From the NCBI GenBank assembly GCA_000388065.2, contig KB932218.1: a DNA stretch of 9,675 bases, one strand, 5' to 3'. This DNA comes from Fonticula alba ATCC 38817 (lineage: Eukaryota; Protista; Nucleariida). The notes below the pieces were generated by a model. The model did not search any database. It was given only the letters and a program-made list of their open reading frames with translations, and had not been told where the DNA came from. Both the position numbers and the translations under genes were made by a program. Below, piece by piece: positions 1 through 9,675 of the stretch; the first letter of the stretch is position 1; every line of letters begins with the position of its first letter.

Positions 1-273
1 GCGCGGCGCGGGCCCGCCGGCACACGCACGTCGGACGGGCCGAGCAGCCGCCGCGGCGCCGAGAGGATGCCGGTCGCGGCCGCCGCGTCGGCCACCGCCG
101 CGAAGGGCACCGGCCCCGGCGGGCCGCCCCCCGGGGGGGCGCACACCGCGAAGCAGGCGCCCAGCAGCACCTCCGGCTGGAGGACCCGGCCCTGCAGCGG
201 CCCCGGCCCGGGGGCCAGTGCGTCCACGTCGCACCCGGCCAGGAGCGATATTTCCGCGGCCCGCGCGTCGGGC
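1..273 (-). CDS. Exon 2 of the same hypothetical gene, 3'-truncated by the window (PDARAAEISLLAGCDVDALAPG...QPEVLLGACFAVCAP...)
   Basis: Stop-free to position 1 in the frame set by the intron; CTG/GCC/GAC/GTG codon usage like the main gene. Confidence 0.6.
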
Positions 274-348
274 CTTGTCAAGCGCGGCCACCAGCCCGGT
301 TAGACATCGCCACCCGGCCGCAAGCCAATCCGCGGGGAAGAAGCGCAC
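274..348 (-). other. Spliceosomal intron (75 nt)
   Basis: - strand GTGCGC...CTAAC (303-299)...TTGACAAG. The AG at 275-274 is the first AG after the branch motif. Splicing removes the in-frame TAA (302-300), and donor and acceptor phases match. Confidence 0.7.
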
Positions 349-557
349 CGCGCCCGGACGGTCAGCCCGCCGAGGTCCAGCAGGAGCGGCCCCGCGGACC
401 CGGCCGCCAGCCGGGCAAACAGCCCCGGCTCCATGAGCAGCTCCCCGAGCGGGACGCGCCCGCCGCGCGCCCCCTCGGGCCCGGCCGGCCGCGGGTCCGC
501 CGCCACGGGCACCCGGATGCCATCCAAACAAAAGACCCACCGGGGGCTGCGATCCAT
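349..557 (-). CDS. Exon 1 of a hypothetical protein gene (MDRSPRWVFCLDGIRVPVAAD...LLLDLGGLTVRAR); function unknown
   Basis: ATG at 557 preceded on the - strand by C14 and a (CA)-rich leader; codons mostly end in G/C; ends at a phase-2 donor CG|GTGCGC (348). An upstream start or further upstream exons cannot be excluded. Confidence 0.6.
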
Positions 558-957
558 GACGTGCGTATGTGTGTGTGGGGGGGGGGGGGGCGAGGGGCGC
601 AGGGAGAAAGGGCGCCGAGAAGTGCGGCTGTGGGTGCCTGGGGCTGGGCCGCCCCGGGGGACGGCCGCGGCATCTCGGCCCGGCTCCGACAAAAAGCCCC
701 CCCTGCCCGGCCCTCCTGCCGTGCGGGGCGGGCGCCGCGCACCAATCGCCGCACCGATCATGACCGCCGGGCACGCAGGTCCTGGGGGCCGGGGCCGCCG
801 TGAGGTGCCAACGCAACGGGCCGCCCCGCCCAGCGGTGTCGGCGCCCCAGGCCCGGCGAGAGCGCGCCCGGCCGCCGGCTGGCCTCGTCCCGGGCGCGGC
901 CGGACGCCGCCCGACACCGGGTCTCACACCCGGGTCCGGGGGACGGCCCCCCGCGTA

Positions 958-987
958 NNNNNNNNNNNNNNNNNNNNNNNNNNNNNN
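958..987. other. Assembly gap (30 N)
   Basis: Run of n; any ORF crossing it has an unreliable frame. Confidence 1.
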
Positions 988-1043
988 GAAAAGGATGGCA
1001 GGCGCCGCCCTCCATGTGAGGCGGTCTATGGCCAGGGGGCATT

Positions 1044-1502
1044 TCACGCCCGCGGCGCATTCGGCCGGCCCCCCACGAGGGGAACCGCCAACGGCAGGCC
1101 GCAGGCCACACGCGGCAGGCGGGAGATCCCCCTGGCGTGCATGCGTGTCCGGAGGCCGGGCAGCCAGCCGTGCGCAGGCCCCCGGCGCGCACCCGGGCAC
1201 GAGTGCACATCCTGCAGCCGGAGCGAGCGCGGCCTGGTGTCCTCCGTGCGCGGGCGGGCCCCCGGCAGGGGGGGGGGGCAGGCGCCGGGGGCCGAGAAGC
1301 CCGCCCCCGCGGCCAAGCCCACAGGCAGGCCCGAGCAGCGAAAGCCCCAGGAGCGGCGAGGGCCCTGCCTGGCCCACGCAGGGCGCCGCGCCGGGCCGAG
1401 GCCGGAGCCGGTCCCTCGCGGCGCCCCCGGCGGCGGGTGGCTGGCCACGGGCCCGGGTCGGGGGCCACAGGTGCGGGCGCCGGTGGCCTCCATGCGCATG
1501 GG
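1044..1502 (-). CDS. Possible terminal exon of an unresolved - strand gene (PMRMEATG...TEDTRPRSLRLQDVHSC...NAPRA*)
   Basis: Preceded by CCTTTATATAG| (AG at 1504-1503), high GC3 in its distal half, TGA at 1046-1044. No recognisable domain and no convincing donor identified. Confidence 0.25.
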   Translation of the reverse strand, partial: PMRMEATGARTCGPRPGPVASHPPPGAPRGTGSGLGPARRPAWARQGPRRSWGFRCSGLPVGLAAGAGFSAPGACPPPLPGARPRTEDTRPRSLRLQDVHSCPGARRGPAHGWLPGLRTRMHARGISRLPRVACGLPLAVPLVGGRPNAPRA

Positions 1503-1822
1503 CTATATAAAGGCGACTGTGCGCCACGCACAACAGTACCGGGGCCCGGTTGTGGGGTGGCGGGAAGAGGCCCGTGCCGGCGGGGAGCCCGGTGCGCGGC
1601 AGCATGTACACCCGCGAGCTGGCGGCGGCCCTGCCCCGCCGGGCGGGCCCCCCAGCGGGCTGACCTCCACCTCCGGGCACCGGGGCGCCTTGGTCGGGGC
1701 CTCGACCGAGACCGAGGCCGGCAGCCCGACTGCCAGCCGCTTTCGGGGGTCGCCTTCGGCCGGACACGGCCACCATGCCGACCTCGGCCGTGCCCCCGCC
1801 GGCCGCGGCCCGGCCGACCGCC

Positions 1823-1917
1823 CTGCGACTCGAAGGGAAGCGCCTCCGCGCGAAGAAGGGCACGGTCAGCAATGCGAGCACGGCCGGCAGGCCACCCCGC
1901 GCCCACGGTGGACATAC
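1823..1917 (-). other. Probable spliceosomal intron (95 nt)
   Basis: Consensus donor CAG|GTATGT (1917), branch CTGAC (1869-1865), pyrimidine tracts, and three in-phase AGs ending at 1844, 1829 and 1823 (CAG). Confidence 0.5.
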
Positions 1918-2254
1918 CTGGCCCAGCGGGCATGAGCCACGCCGCGATGCAGCACACGCCCCGCACGGCCGGCAGGGCGCCGCAACCGGTGAAGCGCGCG
2001 GCGCCACGGCGCACACGGCCCTTCGCCAGGAGCAGCCTGCCCGGCGCACGGCCCATGCCCGCCGAGCCCGGCCGGAGCGTGCCGGCCTCGCCCCGGGGCA
2101 CGGGCAAGATCCCCAGCCGCTGGGCCCACCTCGGGCAATGGCTGGCCACCAGCCGCCGCAAGAGGGCCGGCCCGCTGGCCGGAGGGGCCACCGCCGCGGC
2201 CGGCAGCCCGGCGAAGTCCCACTCCCGCAGGCGAGCCACTTGCCAGCGAGAAAG
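1918..2254 (-). CDS. Possible internal exon (LSRWQVARLREWDFAGLP...VRGVCCIAAWLMPAGP); 5' boundary hidden by the poly-G tract
   Basis: Coding-like codon usage and amino-acid composition, ending at the strong 1917 donor; no family recognised. Confidence 0.35.

Positions 2255-2333
<79 letters not shown>
2255..2333 (+). repeat. C79 homopolymer (G79 on - strand)
   Basis: Counted directly; true length is uncertain for such tracts. Confidence 0.9.
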
Positions 2334-2335
<2 letters not shown>

Positions 2336-2825
2336 GGCCAGGACCGAGGCCCGAAGGACGGGACCGTCACGCCTATGGCCAGCATGCGGTGGCGCGGCAG
2401 GCCGCCCCCGGCGCACACCCATGCAGCCGGTCGCCTCGAGGCCGATGCCGGTCCGGCCACAACCGGCCCCGGCACGCGGGGCTGGCCACACGCGCCTCCG
2501 CCGCGACACGCTCGACCGCCGGCAGGGCACACCCGGCTGCACAGCGGCGGCCGGCAGCGCCGCAGCCCCGGGGCCCGGCTGGATTCCAACGCGCCTCGGA
2601 CACCCGGGGCAGGCGGCCGCCACCCAAGAAGGGCGCCGGTCGCCGCGCCCAGCACCGCCGCATGGGGCGTCGGCCGTAGGCCGCCCGCCGGCCGGGGCCG
2701 CGACACCGCGAGGCACGGCGCCCGCGGCCCCGGGGCCTGGGCCCGTGGCTGTGCCCGGCCGGCCGCGCCAGGCCCAGGACCCGGCACCCGCCGGACTCCC
2801 GGCCCCCCGGCCCACCGACCTGCCC

Positions 2826-3024
2826 CTGGGCAGAAGAAGGACAGGGAAAGACACCGGCCGGCCTCCGCGCGATCTGGGCCGGGGGGGCCGGAGGGGGGCG
2901 CCCTTCCGCGGGGCCCGCATGCCCGGGGCCAGCGCGCCTGGCCCGGGCCTCGCATCCGGCCCGGTATGCCGGGCGAGAGAACGCGCGGGCCCCGGTCCCC
3001 GTGCGGCGACCCCGCGGCACGTAC
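2826..3024 (-). other. Possible intron (199 nt)
   Basis: Strong acceptor TCTTTCCCTGTCCTTCTTCTGCCCAG| (AG 2827-2826) and candidate donor AAC|GTACGT (3024) with compatible phase 0; no clear branch motif. Confidence 0.3.
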
Positions 3025-3564
3025 GTTGGCATGCCTGCCGGCCATCCAGCAGTTGGCCCGATTTCGCGAGCGCATGCGCCGCTCACGCCACCGGCCGGGG
3101 GGCGGCCAACACGCGCCGCAGGGCGGCCGGGCCCAGCCCCGGCTGGCGCCCCCGCCCGGCCAGACTCCCCCCTGGGCCCGGGCGAGGCGCGACGCAACGG
3201 GGCCACTACCCCTGCCCGGGCGGGGCGCGCGGACGCGCACGAGCAGGGGCCGCGCTCCCCCCCCCCCCCCCCCGGACGCAACCAGGCATGCCAGCAGGAC
3301 GGCACCGACTAGCCCGGACGCCCGGCCCCCGGGCAACTTCGCGGCTGACCGCAGCCCCCTGCGTGCGCCTGCCCTACTCGGCCGGTGAAACCTCCACAAT
3401 AATAGACATATATATTCACACCATTGATATAGCCCCGCATATTTGCTGCCCATGTTTATGGATGCGTCTCGCCGGGGGGGCCCCCTCGCCCCCTTTCCGG
3501 AGATGGGCTGCGGTGGTGAGAATGTGTTCGCCATTGCCCGGCCGCCGGATTGTTGTGAGATTGT

Positions 3565-3595
3565 GGCCGCCCCTCCCGGCCGCCCCTCCCGGCCG
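3565..3595. repeat. 13-bp tandem repeat (GGCCGCCCCTCCC)x2.4 containing GC-box-like GGGGCGG on the - strand
   Basis: Units at 3565-3577 and 3578-3590, partial unit 3591-3595. Confidence 0.85.
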
Positions 3596-3625
3596 GGGGA
3601 CACACCAGACCGCCACGCTGGCCGG

Positions 3626-3655
3626 GCCGCCGGCGGGGTGCACCCCGCCGGCGGC
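3626..3655. repeat. Perfect 30-bp palindrome GCCGCCGGCGGGGTGCACCCCGCCGGCGGC
   Basis: All 15 pairs checked base by base about the axis 3640/3641. Confidence 0.97.
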
Positions 3656-3797
3656 ACTCAAGGGACGGCTTGCCCAGCGGCGGCCCAGCGCCAGGACGCC
3701 ATCTCATCGGTCTTTCCCCCGCCCCCTCCTCCCTCACTCGCCGACCCCTTGCCAGTCCTCGCCTCCTCGTGCCCCCCCCCCCCCCCCGCGGGCCCCC

Positions 3798-3993
3798 CGA
3801 GACGCATCCATAAACATGGGCAGCAAATATGCGGGCCTATATCAATGGTGTGAATATATATGTCTATTCCCGGCCCTCCCCCCCCCCCCCCCACCCCCTC
3901 CCCGGCACCCCTCCTCACCGGTGCGGACCCCCGGTCGCACCCGCGCACGCTCCTGCCAGGCCCTCGCGCCCGGCCTCGCGTCCCCGCGCGGTG
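3798..3993 (+). promoter_or_regulatory. Putative core promoter/5' leader of the large gene (TATATA at 3855-3860, C15 at 3878-3892)
   Basis: AT-rich TATA-like core about 135 bp upstream of the ATG, followed by a pyrimidine-rich leader; positional inference only. Confidence 0.35.
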
Positions 3994-4098
3994 ATGGCCA
4001 GCCTCCTCGCCGGCCGCCATCGGCCCTCGGCCCTCGCGCCGGTGCTGCCGGCGCTGCTGCTGCTGCTGCTGCTGCTGCTGCACTCGGCCGCCCGCGGC
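3994..4098 (+). other. Predicted signal peptide with (CTG)9 poly-Leu core (4054-4080)
   Basis: Basic N-region (RHR), hydrophobic core, A-R-G cleavage-like motif; judged by eye. Confidence 0.75.
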
Positions 4099-5491
4099 GC
4101 GCCGGACTTCCACACGGTCTGGCTGCTCGACAGCGACTTGTCCCCCACCCGGCAGGCGGACATTGTCTTTTGCGACTTCTTCTCCCAGAGACGACTGATG
4201 ATCGGCGGGCCGGATGGCTTCGACGACATCTTCTACCAGAAGGTCCACTTCTCGGTGCGCACGGCGCCGGAGGGCAAGCGCCGGGGCGACTTCGCCGACC
4301 CGCGCCCGGTGCGCTTCCTACCCGGCGACTCCCTGCCCAAGACCTGCTTCACGGACTATCCCTTTGCCCCGGGCGGCCCCGCGCCGATGGCCCTGTATGC
4401 GGGCCTGGTGACCAATTGGGTGAGCGAATTCACGTCCCTGGTCATGAGCCACAGCATCGGCATCTTGCTCAATGATGACATCGGCCTCCGGCGGGCATTC
4501 TCCGGGCAAACCTTTGTCATGGTCTTCGACCGGACTGCCCCCCCGCGCATGGAGCCCCACATGCTGAGCCTCGTTGACGGGGCCCTGACCCTGATCCGGG
4601 TCATGGACCTCTCGGGCAGCGCCGTCAACGACGCCTTCGGCCTGCGCGGCATCGGCCTGCTGACGGCCACCGACCTGGACGCCAATGGCCTGGTGGACGC
4701 GGTCATGGTGGCCGCCTCGGATGCCCTCCACCCGACCGGCCCGCAGTCGGTCTACTGGCTGTCCAACATCGGCCGGCCGCTCGCCGGCGCCAGCGACCTG
4801 GCCGACCTGTCGCTGCTGTACCAGCTGCCGGCCGGCTTCCGCGCCGGGCAAATGGTCGTCGGCGACTTCGACGGCGATGGCCACGCCTCGGACCTGGCCG
4901 TGGTGTCCGGCGCCGGGTCCACCGCCCCGGAGCAGGTGATCTTCCTGCTGACGTCGGACCTGGCGGCCCCGGTGCACCTGCTGCTGGCCGACATGGTCGT
5001 TGATGATTTGGCCCTGGCCTCGGTGGCCGTGGACCAACGGCAGCCGAAGATCGCCCGCGCGCCCGGGCTCGCGGCCCCGGGCCATGACAGCCTGCTGGTG
5101 GCCCACGGCAGCCGGGTGTGGCTGGTGCCGGGGCCGGTGCGGCCGGCCGGCGGCCGGCCATCGGACCTCGGCCTGCTGGAGGCCCACGGGGCCGGCCTGC
5201 TGCCGGACTTCCCCACCCACTCGGACGTCTGGTGGTCGGTGGCCACCGGGGACTTCGACGGGGACGGCCATCTGGACGTGGCCCTGGCCCACGGGTCCAT
5301 GGGCGGGCAGGTGCTGCTCCTGTCGCAGGTGGCCGCCTCGCCGAACTGCCTGTGCGGCCCGGGCGCCCGCTGCCTCCATGGGGGCTTCTTCGAGCAGCCC
5401 ACCTGCCAGTGTCTGGACCCGAATGTGGACCCGGGCACGGACTTCGCCCCGTGCGAGTTCTGCCGGCCGGGCTTCTTCCGCGCGACGAACG
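3994..5491 (+). CDS. Exon 1 of a large secreted/cell-surface protein: signal peptide, FG-GAP-like repeats, EGF/laminin-EGF-like segment
   Basis: MASLLAGRHRPSALAPVLPALLLLLLLLLHSAARG/APDF. Ca-loop motifs DLDANGLVD (4672), DFDGDGHASD (4864), DFDGDGHLD (5251). Cys-rich CLCGPGARCLHGG...CQC...CEFCRPGFF from 5347. Strong GC3 bias; ends at phase-1 donor G|GTGCGT. Confidence 0.9.
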
Positions 5492-5636
5492 GTGCGTTCG
5501 GCCACCGGCCCCCTGCCCCCTGCCGGGGCTTCCCATGGTGCCCGAGGCCCGGCATCCGGACACTGACAGCCTTGCGGCCGCTCCTGCGACTTGCCCCGGC
5601 CCTGGGCCCCCTGGCCGGCGCGGCCGCATCCCCCAG
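5492..5636 (+). other. Spliceosomal intron (145 nt, phase 1)
   Basis: GTGCGT donor, CTGAC branch motif at 5563-5567, first usable AG in CCCCCAG (5636). Splicing gives the coherent junction CRPGFFRATN-D-APCQRCHDTC and switches into the long open frame. Confidence 0.85.
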
Positions 5637-8026
5637 ACGCCCCGTGCCAGCGGTGCCATGACACGTGTGCCGCGTGCACCGGGCCCGGGCCCGGCGACTG
5701 CCGGGCCTGCCACGGGCCGCAGCTGCTCCGCCGCGGGGCCTGCGTCGACACCCCCGAGCCGGAGGTGACGGTGACCCGCTCGGCCCCCAGTGCGCGGGTC
5801 TTCTATGAGGCCACCCCGGCCGGGGGGTTCCCCATCCCCGGCGGGTCATTCACTTCGGTCATGCCCTTCCTTGCCGACGCCCCGATGGGCGCCTCCATGG
5901 GCACGGTCGAGACAAACGTCCGCCTGCGGCTGGAATTGACGGACTCCCCCCCGCCCGAGGGGCTGAGCTTCCTCAGGAACTATAGCGCCAACAGGTTGCT
6001 GACCTTCCGGCGGACGCCCCTGCACGGGGGCCTCCAGGCGGTGGCCGAGGCCGAAGCCCCGCTCAACTCCCATCCCCTGGTCAAGTACAACCAAAAGCTG
6101 GCCTTTCTGCCGAACAGCGGCGCCATCATGACCTGCGCCCAGGCCAACCTGGCCGGCCAGTGCCAGCGCATCCAACAAAATGACGGGCTCTCCCTGGAGC
6201 ATATCACCATCGGCCGGCTGGCCGGCGAGCCCGGGCCGGACGCCATCATGCGCGTGTACAATGGCCCGGCCTTTGGCTACCGGGCCATCACCAATGGCAC
6301 CCTGCTGTCGGTGCACTGGGCCGCGGTCGACAATGATTTTGGCATCGAGACCATGGTGGTCCTCGACCAGGAGGTCACCCTCAACACCGGGCCCGACTTC
6401 GGCCCGGCCGGGTCCTGTACCCTGCGCTGGTTCCCCTTCCAGTCGTTTGAGGTGTCCTCGCTGCCGGCCCTGCCGGCCGAGGTCCTCCTGCCGGCCATCC
6501 CCTGTGGCAGCCTCATCCCGGTGATGCCGGGCCCGGGCCAGCGCCCGGGCTTCCTGCTGGTGCCGCGCGTGCCGGTCCCCCACGAGGGCGACCAGGTGGT
6601 GCTGTTTCTCCTGCGGAACACCGCCACCGGGGCGCAGCACATGCGGCCGGATTTCCCGGCCCCGGTGCCCCTCCTGACCTTGGGGCATTTGGCCGACCGG
6701 GGCGATTTCCCGGGCACTGGCCGGGCCCTGGTGGCCCAGTCCGACCCGCTGGTCATGGGCCCCGGCCGGGCGCGGGTCTTCCTGTGGACCGGCGCCTGGC
6801 TGCTCCTGGTGGATGTGACCTTTGACCAGGGCGAGGGGCCGGCCGCCAGCCATGCGGTGGCCGTGGCCCATGAGCCGCTGGTGCCGCGGCACTCCTTCGG
6901 CCATTTTACCGGCGACCCGGTGTACATGGCCGTGCTGGAAGTGGAGCAAGGGGGCCCCAGCTCGGCCGTGGCCCTGCTCAACATGCGCACCCGTGTCGGC
7001 GCGGTCTTCCACCCGGGCACCCGGGACAATGGCTGCGGCTGTGGCATCCTCGGGCAATGCCTTCCCCCGAGTGCCTGGCATGAGGGGGTGGCATGCTCGT
7101 CGAACTTCGGGCCCGGGGACAGCAGCCCCCCCCCGAGTGTCGCCACCAATGAGCACTGCATCTACTTCCCGACCAGCCTCCGGGTGGGGGACTTGTGCCA
7201 GTGCGCCAGCGGGTCGGCCCCGTTGGATGTGCCGGCCGGCGACCTGTGCGAGGCATGCCAGCCGGATGCCAGCGCCTCCGGCACCCCGGTGCATGCCACC
7301 ACCGAGGCCGCCTCCGGCCCGCTGGACATGGGGGCGGCCGCCTGTGACGCCTGCCCGGTCGAGGGGTGCCAGCTGTGCCAGGGGCCCCGGTGCATCCGCT
7401 GCCAGCCGGGGCTGATGCTCACCGAGTCCGGGCGCTGCGCCGCCCGGTGCGATGTGCCCGATGCCCCGGTGCTGAATGGCCACCAGTGTCAGGCCCCCGG
7501 GCCGGGGGACGTCTGGCTGGCGGCCCAGCACATTCCCCTGCACCCGGCCTGGGCGGCCATGGAGGCGTCGCAAGTGTCGCCGCTGCGGGTGGCCCGCTCG
7601 TCGGCCGGCCACTCGGCGCTCCTGCTCTCGGCCCAGAGCTTCCTGCACCTGTCGCGCGTCCGGCCGGAGGATGGCCAGCGCGAGGACTGGATGGTCTCGG
7701 TGGCCGGGCTCCTGCCGGACGCGCGGCCGATCGAGCCGCGGGCCATTCACCCGGCCACTGCCATGGACTTCATGCGGGGCTACTGCACCGGCGGCACGAG
7801 CAGCGTCAACATGCTGGCCGGCACCCGGCCGGCCGGGCGGTCGGCCGGCCGATTGCCAGCCGGCCCCTGGGCCGGTCCTCTGCCCGGGTGGCTGGCCCCC
7901 TCGCTGTTGGGGGACCCCCCGGCCTGGGGCCAGTCCGGCCTGGCGGCCGCCAGCCCTGGCACCCCTGCCCCAGGGGCGGGCCCCCTGACCGGGGGGGCCT
8001 CTCCCTCCGCCGGGCGGGCTACCCCG

Positions 8027-8062
<36 letters not shown>

Positions 8063-9675
8063 ACCACCACCACCACCACCACCACCACCACCGAGGCTCT
8101 GGTCTGGGACACCGTCGACAGGCAATTCATCGAGGCCTTCCCGAAGCCCATGCACTTGCCCTGGTTCGCCGACCTGGCCCGGGCCCCGCCCGAGGGGGCG
8201 GGCCTTGGGCCGGCCATGTCGACCGGGCCCCACCCGGCCGGCCTGGCCAAGCAGGCGGCCGGCCAGCTGGCCGGCTTGGCAACCTTCCTGTTGGCCATCG
8301 GCGGCCCGATGCCCCCGCCGCCGAGCATCCCCTCCATGTATTCCCGGCCGCTTGGCACTTGCGGCTTCGATGGCCGGCTGCTGGCCGAGCAATCTTACGT
8401 GCAGATCCAATCGTCCCTGCTGGCGGATCTCCTCGTCATTTCCACCGAATGGATGGAGCACTGCCAGGTGCTGGTCATCCCGCTGCCCTATCCCGAAGAG
8501 GAGATCTTCCTCCCGCTCGGGGCCACATCCTCCGACCTGATCAGCACCGCCTTCCGCTTGCAGCGCATCCCGGCCGGCAGCCAGCCCGATGCCCGCCGTG
8601 ATGTCTACCTCCTGCCGGCGGGCTTCCTCAACCTGCACGGGACGGACAGCGACAAGTGCGACTACGTCTTGCTGGAGGTCGGCCCACCGAGCCCGGGGGC
8701 CCTGCCACGGCACACACACGTCAGTCTGATGGGCCTAATGCTGGGCAGTCTGGCGGCCATCCAGCTGGGGTCGGTGCGCGAGGTGGCCGCCTGGCACCCG
8801 GTCGACCAGCCGGGCATCCTCCTGCTCCACATGGATGGCGCATGCGTGTGGGCCCTGGAGCCGGAGGATGTGCACATCACCAACATCGCCATGGCGTCCA
8901 TACTCCAGGGGGAGCACTTCGAGCTGGCCCTCCTCCGTGCGGATGGCCAGGCCGACAGCATTGTCCTGGTCGATGCCACCTGCATCGTCAGGTCGCACGC
9001 CTGCCTCTACGGGCCGGGGCTCTCGGACAACACCGGCAGCAGTGCCGGCGGCAGCGCCGGCGCCAGCGCCAGCGGCAGCAGCGGCGCCAGCGCCAGCGGC
9101 AGCGGCAACACCGGCTCGCGCAATGGCTACGGCTGTGGCATGCACGTCCTCGAGAGCGACCCCATCACGGAGGATGTGATGCTCCAGGTGCACGATCTGA
9201 ATTCCGACAACCTGCTGGACTTTGTGGCCATCTTCCCGGCCTCCGGCCGGGTGGTGGCCTACATGGCGCAGGACAACACCCGGCGGTCCTTCCGCCGGGT
9301 GGTCATCCTCCCGGGCCGGATGGCGGCCGCCACCGGCGCCATCGGCCCCCGGCCGTCGGATGTCTTCATGGCCGATGTCGACCAGGATGGCCACATGGAC
9401 GTGGTGGTGGTGGACCGGTCGGCCGGCGACGAGCAGACCAGCTTCACGGTGTACGGCCGGGCCGACCAGACCGCGGCCTGGTGCCCGCCCGGGGTGACCT
9501 TCGACCCGGTGGCCGGCCGGTGCGCCTGCCCCGGGGCCGGGCGCTTCATCAGCCCGGTGACCGACGAGTGCGAGTGCATCGAGCACGCGGTGCCGGCCGG
9601 GCCGGGCGCCGTGGACTGCATTTGCCCGGCCGGCATGCAGGCCGCCCTGTCGGCGTGCGTCTGCCAGCCGGGGCT
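5637..9675 (+). CDS. Exon 2 (3'-truncated): furin-like repeat, degenerate propeller-like block, Cys-rich block, third FG-GAP-containing block, start of further Cys-rich repeats
   Basis: Translated by hand with no stop from 5639 to 9675. Furin-like CQRCHDTCAACTGPGPGDCRAC (5645); Cys-rich 7034-7489 (CDACPVEGCQLCQGPRCIRCQPG); motifs DLNSDNLLD (9194) and DVDQDGHMD (9374); Cys-rich 9482-end. Small in-frame introns cannot be excluded. Confidence 0.88.
8027..8092 (+). repeat. Compound coding microsatellite (GCC)10(ACC)12 encoding Ala10-Thr12
   Basis: Counted directly in the exon-2 frame. Confidence 0.95.
9028..9115 (+). repeat. Gly/Ser/Ala loop: near-perfect 24-bp tandem duplication (9059-9082, 9083-9106) inside a 10-bp direct repeat CAACACCGGC (9028-9037, 9106-9115)
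   Basis: Encodes NTGSSAGGSAGASASGSSGASASGSGNTG. Confidence 0.85.

What the first reader, a model, noticed from the sequence alone, without database searches (positions are those of the whole stretch)
3401..3868. 468-bp mirror-symmetric element with 71-bp AT-rich arms between divergent transcription units
Seen directly: 70/71 complementary arms, 41% GC against a much more GC-rich background, ending 125 bp before the large gene's ATG. Each arm faces outward with the same sequence (...CATAAACATGGG...CTATATCAATGGTGTGAATATATATGTCTATT), so both flanking directions get an identical TATA/CAAT-like module. Hypotheses (inference): (a) a non-autonomous MITE/foldback transposon, recent given the near-identity; a TA duplication is possible (3403-3404, 3865-3866) but cannot be told apart from the arms, and the termini are not Tc1/mariner-like; (b) a duplicated-core bidirectional promoter; (c) a hairpin RNA giving a 71-bp dsRNA stem for small RNAs; (d) ends of an invertible segment controlling a surface-protein gene.
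Basis: partly seen in the sequence, partly recalled or inferred. Interest (0 to 1): 0.8.

Follow-up and report, generated by a model that had tools for sequence, protein, structure and literature searches.

The report
Single-copy inverted repeat in a receptor promoter
Just upstream of a giant surface-receptor gene of the amoeba Fonticula alba, a 71-letter AT-rich stretch occurs twice in opposite directions; it is real but single-copy, so it looks like a locally duplicated promoter piece, not a jumping gene, and its function is untested.

Summary
The arms 3401-3471 and 3798-3868 pair at 70 of 71 bases. They are 41% GC in a 75% GC window and are its only AT-rich islands. The right arm ends 125 nt before the ATG at 3994.

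Further findings:
- A perfect 30-nt palindrome (3626-3655) lies 6 nt off the symmetry axis. It is the only one of that length in 165 kb of sampled genome.
- The rest of the spacer shows no symmetry.
- The element is single-copy. A DNA contig runs from unique flank through the left arm at flank depth, and no other contig lies on that arm at 90% identity or more.
- No copy turned up in eight other Fonticula loci, JGI metagenomes or IMG/VR.
- An independent soil-metagenome strain carries the left junction unchanged.
- RNA runs hold none of the element's words.
- Weak arm-like matches lie upstream of two paralogues, in the left-arm direction and at similar distances.
- The right arm splits a pyrimidine tract that is continuous in several paralogues.

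Best reading (about 0.45): an upstream promoter-type module was copied locally in inverted orientation, and the right arm now serves as the proximal promoter. A multi-copy MITE family is refuted, a hairpin RNA is unsupported, and inversion could not be tested.

The scan had already noted the axial palindrome on this window, but nothing like this element on other DNA. Interest is modest.

The parts
3401..3471 (.). Left arm of the inverted repeat. The similarity fades out by about 3489 through G/C-run indels.
   Evidence: 70/71 against the right arm and 41% GC. It lies inside DNA contigs of X1 (3257-3655) and X7 (3372-3595) with no differences.
3798..3868 (.). Right arm. It reads toward the gene as the CCATAAACATGG box (3808-3819), then TATATCAATGG (3838-3848) and GAATATATATG (3852-3862).
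   Evidence: It ends 125 nt before the ATG. It interrupts a pyrimidine-rich tract.
3472..3797 (.). GC-rich spacer (76% GC) that is not symmetric.
   Evidence: The left half against the reverse complement of the right half scores no better than shuffles: global 366 of 500 shuffles score at least as well, local 54 of 500. No Pfam family matches its 136-aa ORF. No Rfam family matches.
3626..3655 (.). Perfect 30-nt GC-rich palindrome near the symmetry axis. Its centre is 3640.5 and the repeat's centre is 3634.5.
   Evidence: It is the only perfect palindrome longer than 18 nt in the 165,017 unmasked bases sampled. It forms the apical hairpin in the fold. The X1 contig ends exactly at 3655.
3565..3590 (+). 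A 13-nt unit (GGCCGCCCCTCCC) in two tandem copies. Without one copy, the two spacer halves would be 141 and 142 nt.
   Evidence: The symmetry argument is post hoc.
3772..3787 (+). C16 tract just inside the right arm.
3878..3892 (+). C15 tract 9 nt outside the right arm. The transcription start is predicted here if the arm's TATA-like box is used.
   Evidence: The start site is an inference only.
3257..3273 (+). C17 tract 127 nt to the left of the left arm.
3994..5491 (+). Exon 1 of the giant FG-GAP surface-receptor gene. It encodes a signal peptide with a (CTG)9 poly-Leu run at 4054-4080.
   Evidence: Strong third-position GC signal. Pfam FG-GAP_3 at 1.6e-08. RNA contigs cover it from 4090.
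5492..5636 (+). GT-AG intron of 145 nt.
   Evidence: An RNA contig of X2 joins 5490 to 5636. The ends and the restored reading frame were checked.
5637..9675 (+). Exon 2 of the same gene. It runs off the end of the window.
1490..1511 (+). The window's only canonical TATA site: the perfect palindrome CCATGCGCATGG followed by TATATAAA. The order of box and TATA is the same as in the outward reading of each arm.
   Evidence: (family D9). The similarity is weak (nhmmer E = 61).
1..557 (-). Start of the nearest clearly coding left gene. It is divergent from the receptor gene and has no Pfam match.

Best explanation
The element is a single-copy, locally generated inverted duplication in the promoter region of a giant FG-GAP surface-receptor gene of Fonticula alba. 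An AT-rich upstream module of about 75-90 nt, now the left arm some 520-590 nt before the ATG, was copied in reverse orientation. The copy landed in the pyrimidine-rich tract just before the gene and is now the right arm, 126-196 nt before the ATG. A likely cause is template switching or fold-back repair near the poly-C tracts and the 30-nt palindrome. Read outward, each arm carries a quasi-palindromic CCATN3CATGG box followed by TATA-like A/T stretches. I infer that the right arm now acts as the gene's proximal core promoter, with a start site around 3885-3895. The left arm would be the older distal copy, facing away from the gene. What is shown: the structure, the single-copy status, the presence of the left junction in a second strain, and the absence of the element from assembled RNA. 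What is inferred: the direction of the duplication, the mechanism, and promoter activity.
For: Structure. Single copy: the X1 contig 3257-3655 has depth 115, against 110 for the left flank contig. The 3404-3536 bin holds only that contig at a 90% likeness cut-off. No copy was found in eight other Fonticula loci, in JGI metagenomes or in IMG/VR. Independent strain: the X7 contig 3372-3595 is identical, while its flank contig has 4 differences in 491 nt. The arms are the only AT-rich islands in the window. Most of the paralogues and other genes sampled also carry an AT-richer island in the 800 nt before the ATG, usually 200-700 nt before it. Arm-like matches in the left-arm direction occur upstream of two paralogues. 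The first is L001 8500-8564, at -416, with 0 of 500 shuffles as good and nhmmer E = 0.29 over 428 kb. The second is L005 5433-5450, a 17/18 match at -569. The right arm splits a pyrimidine tract: C+T is 0.80 before it, 0.49 within it and 0.71 after it. L001, L002 and L008 have a strongly pyrimidine-rich tract within about 150 nt of the ATG. Box-then-TATA order is the same at the canonical TATA site 1490-1511. The gene is expressed and spliced, yet RNA runs hold 0.00 of the element's words, which fits a start site downstream of the right arm.
Against: No transcription start site was mapped. RNA contigs break at the CTG repeat and the poly-C tracts, so missing 5' words are weak evidence. The paralogue matches are only suggestive. 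In the tile scan an equally scoring hit lies at L001 3520-3562, which is not a promoter position. Long-range alignment of the upstream regions is no better than a reversed-sequence control. No leftward transcript was seen in 2340-3400. The unique axial palindrome is not explained by a simple copy-and-insert event. The right arm itself was not seen as a listed read contig. Several paralogue promoters are hidden in assembly gaps.
Confidence: 0.45

Rival explanations
1. The element is a relic of a foldback or MITE-like DNA transposon. A 468-bp non-autonomous element with 71-bp terminal inverted repeats inserted upstream of the gene and is now solitary or very low in copy number.
For: The size, the lack of coding capacity, the sharp outer ends and the AT-rich arms in a GC-rich host all fit. 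A second, unrelated palindromic element lies upstream of a paralogue at L004 3820-4192. An earlier scan note reports a low-copy repeat of about 450 bases elsewhere in this genome.
Against: No further copy at 90% identity or more appears in 100x DNA contigs. None appears in 165 kb of other loci or in the public scans. No target-site duplication is present: the flanks are ...CACAAT and CCCGGC.... The spacer has host-like GC. The genome is reported as 0.36% repeats. Arm-like matches upstream of two paralogues argue that the left arm is old resident sequence.
Confidence: 0.2
2. The element is a young, neutral structural accident. Replication template switching at a hard-to-copy poly-C and palindrome region made an inverted copy of about 80 nt, and it has no function.
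For: The arms differ by 1 in 71, which is about the level of difference between strains (4 in 491 in the X7 flank contig). Poly-C tracts and a unique palindrome sit next to the arms. The spacer is not symmetric.
Against: The copied piece is the most AT-rich and promoter-like sequence in 9.7 kb. It landed at promoter distance from the ATG. An AT-rich tract in DNA that is about 80% GC should decay unless it is young or under constraint.
Confidence: 0.2
3. The locus makes a hairpin RNA. Transcription through both arms gives a 71-bp double-stranded stem that is processed into small RNAs.
For: The predicted fold is very stable, at -155.8 kcal/mol as DNA with z = -15.4.
Against: The RNA runs listed (X2, X4, X6) hold 0.00 of the element's sampled words, although the neighbouring gene is covered. 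No Rfam family matches.
Confidence: 0.04
4. The spacer is an invertible segment. Recombination between the arms flips it and switches expression of the surface protein.
For: Inverted repeats flank a promoter-proximal segment of a gene from a large surface-protein family.
Against: Flipping the spacer leaves the outward-facing arms and the junction with the gene unchanged. No recombinase gene lies in the window. Only one orientation is seen at the left junction in two datasets, though contigs cannot show a minority form.
Confidence: 0.03
5. The right arm is an assembly artefact, wrongly placed between two poly-C tracts.
For: No listed contig covers 3656-3877. The X1 contig passes through the left arm without the break expected if its 31-mers were shared with a second arm. 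X7 holds only the left part.
Against: The arms differ by a substitution and by inner indels, so they are not one read set used twice. X1 holds 0.80 of the element's words, more than the roughly 0.53 that the left contig can supply. Short branches bounded by poly-C are the kind that contig builders clip.
Confidence: 0.05

Closest known systems
MITEs (miniature inverted-repeat transposable elements)
   Same: Under 800 bp, non-coding, terminal inverted repeats, partly AT-rich, and located next to a gene.
   Different: It is single-copy and has no target-site duplication. The 71-bp arms are unusually long, and the spacer has host-like GC. One arm seems to be old resident promoter sequence.
Foldback (FB-type) elements and long-palindrome MITE-like elements
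   Same: Long inverted arms around a middle segment. Another Fonticula locus (L004 3820-4192) has a true 373-nt imperfect palindrome.
   Different: The arms contain no internal subrepeats, no family of copies exists, and the interior is not symmetric.
Local inverted duplications made by template switching or fold-back priming (FoSTeS/MMBIR-type events; named from my own knowledge)
   Same: A single-copy inverted duplicate a few hundred bases from its source, next to homopolymer tracts and a short palindrome that can stall replication.
   Different: Fold-back priming would give a full palindrome centred on the short palindrome. Here only the outer 71-86 nt are duplicated. The junctions show no clear microhomology.
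Bidirectional or palindromic promoters with duplicated core elements
   Same: Two identical outward-facing modules, each a box followed by a TATA-like stretch. One lies at promoter distance from an expressed gene.
   Different: No second transcript was detected on the left side, and no start sites are mapped.
Inverted-repeat hairpin-RNA (endo-siRNA) loci
   Same: Near-perfect arms that would form a 71-bp double-stranded stem if transcribed.
   Different: Assembled RNA from the available runs contains none of the element.

Membership tests
MITE | Terminal inverted repeats | tested here: met
   70/71 arms at the ends of a 468-bp unit.
MITE | Target-site duplication flanking the ends | tested here: not met
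   The flanks ...CTCCACAAT and CCCGGCCC... share no direct repeat. Only a palindromic TA or AT inside the arms could serve, and that is uninformative.
MITE | Many dispersed copies in the genome | tested here: not met
   Contig depth of 115 on the arm matches the single-copy flank at 110. No other contig lies on the left arm at 90% likeness. None was found in 165 kb of other loci. Scans gave no hits. A whole-genome BLAST was not available, so diverged low-copy relatives are not excluded.
MITE | Small size and no coding capacity | tested here: met
   The unit is 468 bp, and its only ORF has no Pfam match.
Foldback element | Long arms built of tandem subrepeats, in a multi-copy family | tested here: not met
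   The arms contain no subrepeats, and the element is single-copy.
Bidirectional promoter | Two divergent transcription start sites within about 1 kb | tested here: inconclusive
   The right gene is expressed from at least 4090. No RNA contig was listed on 2340-3400. No 5'-end data exist.
Core promoter module | TATA-like element at promoter distance upstream of an expressed gene, excluded from the mRNA | tested here: inconclusive
   TATA-like stretches lie at 3838-3862, 132-156 nt before the ATG. RNA runs hold 0.00 of the element's words. No start site is mapped.
Hairpin-RNA / endo-siRNA locus | A transcript through both arms, and small RNAs from the stem | tested here: not met
   The listed RNA runs hold 0.00 of the words. 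Small-RNA libraries were not available, so the second half of the feature is untested.
Invertible promoter switch | Both spacer orientations present in the population | not testable with these tools
   Only 31-mer contigs were available for the runs that hold the locus, and the arms are 71 nt.
Invertible promoter switch | A site-specific recombinase encoded nearby | tested here: not met
   The window's only convincing genes are the FG-GAP receptor and an unknown gene at 1-557.
Local inverted duplication | Two near-identical inverted copies close together, single-copy in the genome, with unique asymmetric DNA between them | tested here: met

The most novel reading that the evidence does not exclude
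Fonticula may have a class of promoter-associated palindromic elements upstream of its giant FG-GAP receptor and receptor-kinase genes. Each would consist of well-kept outer inverted arms plus a short hairpin on the axis. Two sequence-unrelated examples were seen in 165 kb: this one and L004 3820-4192. More may be hidden in the assembly gaps that sit at several paralogue promoters. Such elements could act through DNA structure, by cruciform or hairpin formation or by recombination, to vary or diversify receptor expression.
Probability: 0.08. Interest if true: 0.7.

Novelty: new member of a known kind. Interest (0 to 1): 0.3.

Why it matters
If the arms are promoter modules, this is a clean natural case of a gene acquiring a new proximal promoter by a small inverted duplication of its own distal element. 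The gene belongs to a large, recently expanding family of giant adhesion-type receptors, in a relative of fungi that aggregates into a multicellular fruiting body. It also flags practical points. The window's gene itself was not returned as a predicted protein. Several paralogue promoters fall in assembly gaps, probably because of poly-C tracts and palindromes. Beyond that, it is a local structural feature of modest general interest.

Tried and rejected
- A scan of JGI metagenome contigs for a 26-mer of the arm gave 0 hits.
- A search for relatives of exon 1 in the same collection, to obtain orthologous upstream regions, found none.
- IMG/VR scans for outer and inner arm words gave 0 hits.
- A 19-mer scan of prokaryotic genomes gave 15 scattered hits in unrelated taxa. 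That is near the chance expectation, so I discarded them.
- Rfam found nothing on 3100-4100.
- I rejected the idea that the element is a decayed full palindrome, because the spacer halves show no residual symmetry.
- Long-range collinearity between this upstream region and that of the neighbouring paralogue was no better than a reversed-sequence control.
- The two palindromic elements (this window and L004) share no sequence.
- Candidate ORFs across 560-3400 translate to Arg/Pro/Gly-rich strings that do not look like protein. The Pfam call on them failed on a coordinate slip in another query, and I did not repeat it.
- The earlier-findings look-up by sequence was blank.
- The locus fetched for the nearest paralogue (L001) has a 27.6-kb run of N. 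I infer that the window lies inside it, so its annotated neighbourhood could not be read.

Full report
**Where the window comes from.** Earlier notes of this scan name the genome as Fonticula alba, a slime-mould-like relative of fungi. All paralogous loci I fetched come from one NCBI assembly, GCA_000388065.2. The window is 75% GC, and its non-coding parts are near 80%.

**The observation.**
- The repeat finder reports arms 3401-3476 and 3793-3868, 76 nt and 96% complementary, 316 nt apart.
- The core arms, 3401-3471 and 3798-3868, match at 70 of 71 positions. Similarity continues for about 15 more bases at the inner ends through G-run and C-run indels. The outer ends are sharp.
- The arms are 41% GC and the spacer is 76% GC.
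- With 50-nt windows under 50% GC, the two arms are the only AT-rich islands in the window.
- The right arm ends 125 nt before the ATG at 3994.
- As single-stranded DNA the element folds far better than shuffles, with z = -15.4.

**The axial palindrome.**
- It is the only perfect palindrome longer than 18 nt in 165,017 unmasked bases of Fonticula DNA that I sampled.
- Its centre is 6 nt from the centre of the inverted repeat.
- A 13-nt unit is tandemly duplicated in the left half, at 3565-3590. Without one copy, the two halves would be 141 and 142 nt. This is a post hoc remark.
- The two spacer halves themselves show no residual symmetry: 366 of 500 shuffles score at least as well in a global alignment.
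- So the element is not a decayed full palindrome. The axial palindrome remains unexplained.

**The flanking genes.**
- Third-position GC gives a strong coding signal from 3994 onward, with a frame change near 5500.
- An RNA contig of run X2 joins 5490 to 5636. The intron is 5492-5636, GT-AG, 145 nt, and it restores one reading frame.
- The product has a signal peptide and FG-GAP repeats.
- It belongs to a family of giant receptors of 1800-2950 residues, some with kinase domains.
- On the left, only 1-557 on the minus strand is clearly coding.
- The stretch 560-3400 has weak or no codon periodicity. Its long ORFs translate to Arg/Pro/Gly-rich strings. It contains a C79 tract. No RNA contig was listed on the part laid, 2340-3400.
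- 'Between divergent transcription units' is therefore true only loosely.

**Reads.**
- DNA run X1, probably the source of the assembly, has a 402-nt contig over 3257-3655 with no differences and depth 115. The left flank contig has depth 110.
- At a 90% likeness cut-off, the 3404-3536 bin holds that one contig and nothing else.
- Run X7 is a soil metagenome from 2022. Its contig over 2764-3254 differs from the window at 4 of 491 bases, so it is another strain. Its contig over 3372-3595 is identical to the window.
- The left junction, the left arm and half the spacer are therefore real and present in an independent sample. The arm is not a high-copy repeat.
- The right arm lies between a C16 and a C15 tract. 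Its bin is swamped by poly-C matches, and no listed contig covers it.
- X1 holds 0.80 of the element's sampled words. The left contig plus the words shared between arms can supply only about 0.53.
- The arms differ by one substitution and by inner indels.
- I rate a misassembled right arm as unlikely but not excluded.
- RNA runs X2, X4 and X6 hold 0.00 of the element's words, although the gene is covered at word depth 12-17.

**Copy number elsewhere.**
- No copy of the arm was found in JGI metagenome contigs or in IMG/VR.
- The hits in prokaryotic genomes are chance-level.
- Eight other Fonticula loci hold no copy. The best nhmmer hit has E = 0.29.
- A 2026 preprint reports 0.36% repetitive DNA for F. 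alba (10.64898/2026.06.24.734286).
- No target-site duplication is present.
That test is met as far as these tools reach.

**Comparison with paralogues.**
- I fetched the upstream regions of eight family members.
- Most carry an AT-richer island within 800 nt before the ATG, mostly 200-700 nt before it. L001, L002 and L008 also have a strongly pyrimidine-rich tract within about 150 nt of the ATG.
- Two of them have weak matches to the arm, both in the left-arm direction and at distances like that of the left arm, which lies at -593 to -523.
  - L001 8500-8564 lies at -416. No shuffle in 500 scores as well, and nhmmer gives E = 0.29 over 428 kb, about 0.01 if only paralogue upstream regions are counted.
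  - L005 5433-5450 is a 17/18 match at -569.
- An equally scoring hit lies at L001 3520-3562, which is not a promoter position.
- Long-range alignment of the upstream regions is no better than a reversed-sequence control.
- I therefore treat this as suggestive only.
- In the window, the pyrimidine tract is split by the right arm. C+T is 0.80 at 3700-3792, 0.49 in the arm and 0.71 at 3869-3993.
- Together these results suggest that the left arm is the older resident module and the right arm is a derived inverted copy inserted into the pyrimidine tract.

**What the arms look like.**
- Read outward, each arm has the quasi-palindromic box CCATAAACATGG, followed by A/T-rich stretches: TATATCAATGG and GAATATATATG.
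- The window's only canonical TATA site has the same order. It is the perfect palindrome CCATGCGCATGG at 1490-1501, followed by TATATAAA at 1504-1511.
- The similarity is weak (nhmmer E = 61).
- If the right arm's TATA-like stretch is used, the start site would fall near 3885-3895 and the leader would be about 100 nt. This is inference.

**Verdict on the four readings.**
- (a) A recent multi-copy MITE is refuted. A solitary transposon relic remains possible, at about 0.2.
- (b) A duplicated promoter module is the best fit, but neither bidirectional activity nor any promoter activity is shown.
- (c) A hairpin RNA is unsupported by the available RNA.
- (d) Inversion could not be tested, and it would not change the outward-facing arms.
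- My best explanation, at about 0.45, is a local inverted duplication of an upstream promoter-type module, with the right arm acting as the proximal promoter.
- The same origin with no function is a serious rival, at about 0.2.

**Things seen in passing.** A second, sequence-unrelated palindromic element lies upstream of the paralogue P0004, at L004 3820-4192. Its 75-nt outer arms are 92% complementary. Its inner halves are also significantly symmetric (0 of 500 shuffles). It has a 10-bp hairpin near the axis, and it is followed by a poly-C tract and an assembly gap. Several paralogue promoters fall in assembly gaps, so more such structures may be hidden.

**Limits.** No whole-genome nucleotide search of this eukaryote was available. 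Start sites, small RNAs and spacer orientation remain untested.

Noticed in passing
L004:3820-4192: This is a second, sequence-unrelated palindromic element upstream of a family paralogue (P0004, which has a kinase domain). Its 75-nt outer arms are 92% complementary, and its inner halves are also significantly symmetric. A 10-bp hairpin sits near the axis, and the centre is AT-rich. A poly-C tract and a 1070-N assembly gap follow directly.
   Followed up: partly
window:2255-2333: A run of 79 C lies in the long non-coding stretch to the left of the element. Shorter C or G runs of 14-17 nt lie at 577-590, 3257-3273, 3772-3787 and 3878-3892.
   Followed up: no
window:1490-1511: A perfect 12-nt palindrome, CCATGCGCATGG, lies directly before a canonical TATATAAA box. 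No convincing gene lies downstream on the plus strand. It may drive an unannotated transcript. RNA over 1000-2340 was not examined.
   Followed up: no
window:3994-9675 and L001:10001-47269: The window's receptor gene was not returned as a predicted protein by either protein search. The gene model of the neighbouring paralogue P0001 spans 37 kb across a 27.6-kb masked run, and I infer that the window lies inside that run. The annotation here looks like a fusion that skips a whole gene.
   Followed up: partly
L001:8981-9915; L002:11842-12721; L004:4231-5300 and 5906-5951: Assembly gaps sit at or just upstream of the 5' ends of several family paralogues. This fits promoter regions that are hard to sequence because of poly-C tracts and palindromes.
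   Followed up: no
window:4574 and 5037: All four runs laid (two DNA isolates or strains, one metagenome, one RNA) read A at 4574 where the window has T. They read G at 5037 where the window has A. These are possible consensus errors in the assembly, or contigs of a paralogue laid here.
   Followed up: no
window:3156-3275: RNA run X2 has contig ends at 3156 and 3275 with long unrelated sequence beyond them. No splice signals lie at these positions. The cause is probably poly-C or GC-rich cross-matching, but this is unresolved.
   Followed up: no
L001:3520-3562: A GC-rich stretch aligns to the arm in the right-arm direction with the same score as the paralogue-promoter hit. It is either chance or a decayed copy 5.4 kb upstream of paralogue A.
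   Followed up: partly
L002:6001-15636: The gene model P0002 (2571 aa) appears to fuse two tandem paralogues. The window's exon 1 aligns twice to it, at L002 6022-7467 with 84% identity and at 12728-14067 with 83%.
   Followed up: no
window:4054-4080: A (CTG)9 repeat encodes the poly-Leu core of the signal peptide. It breaks all 31-mer contigs, which is why the 5' end of the mRNA could not be followed.
   Followed up: no
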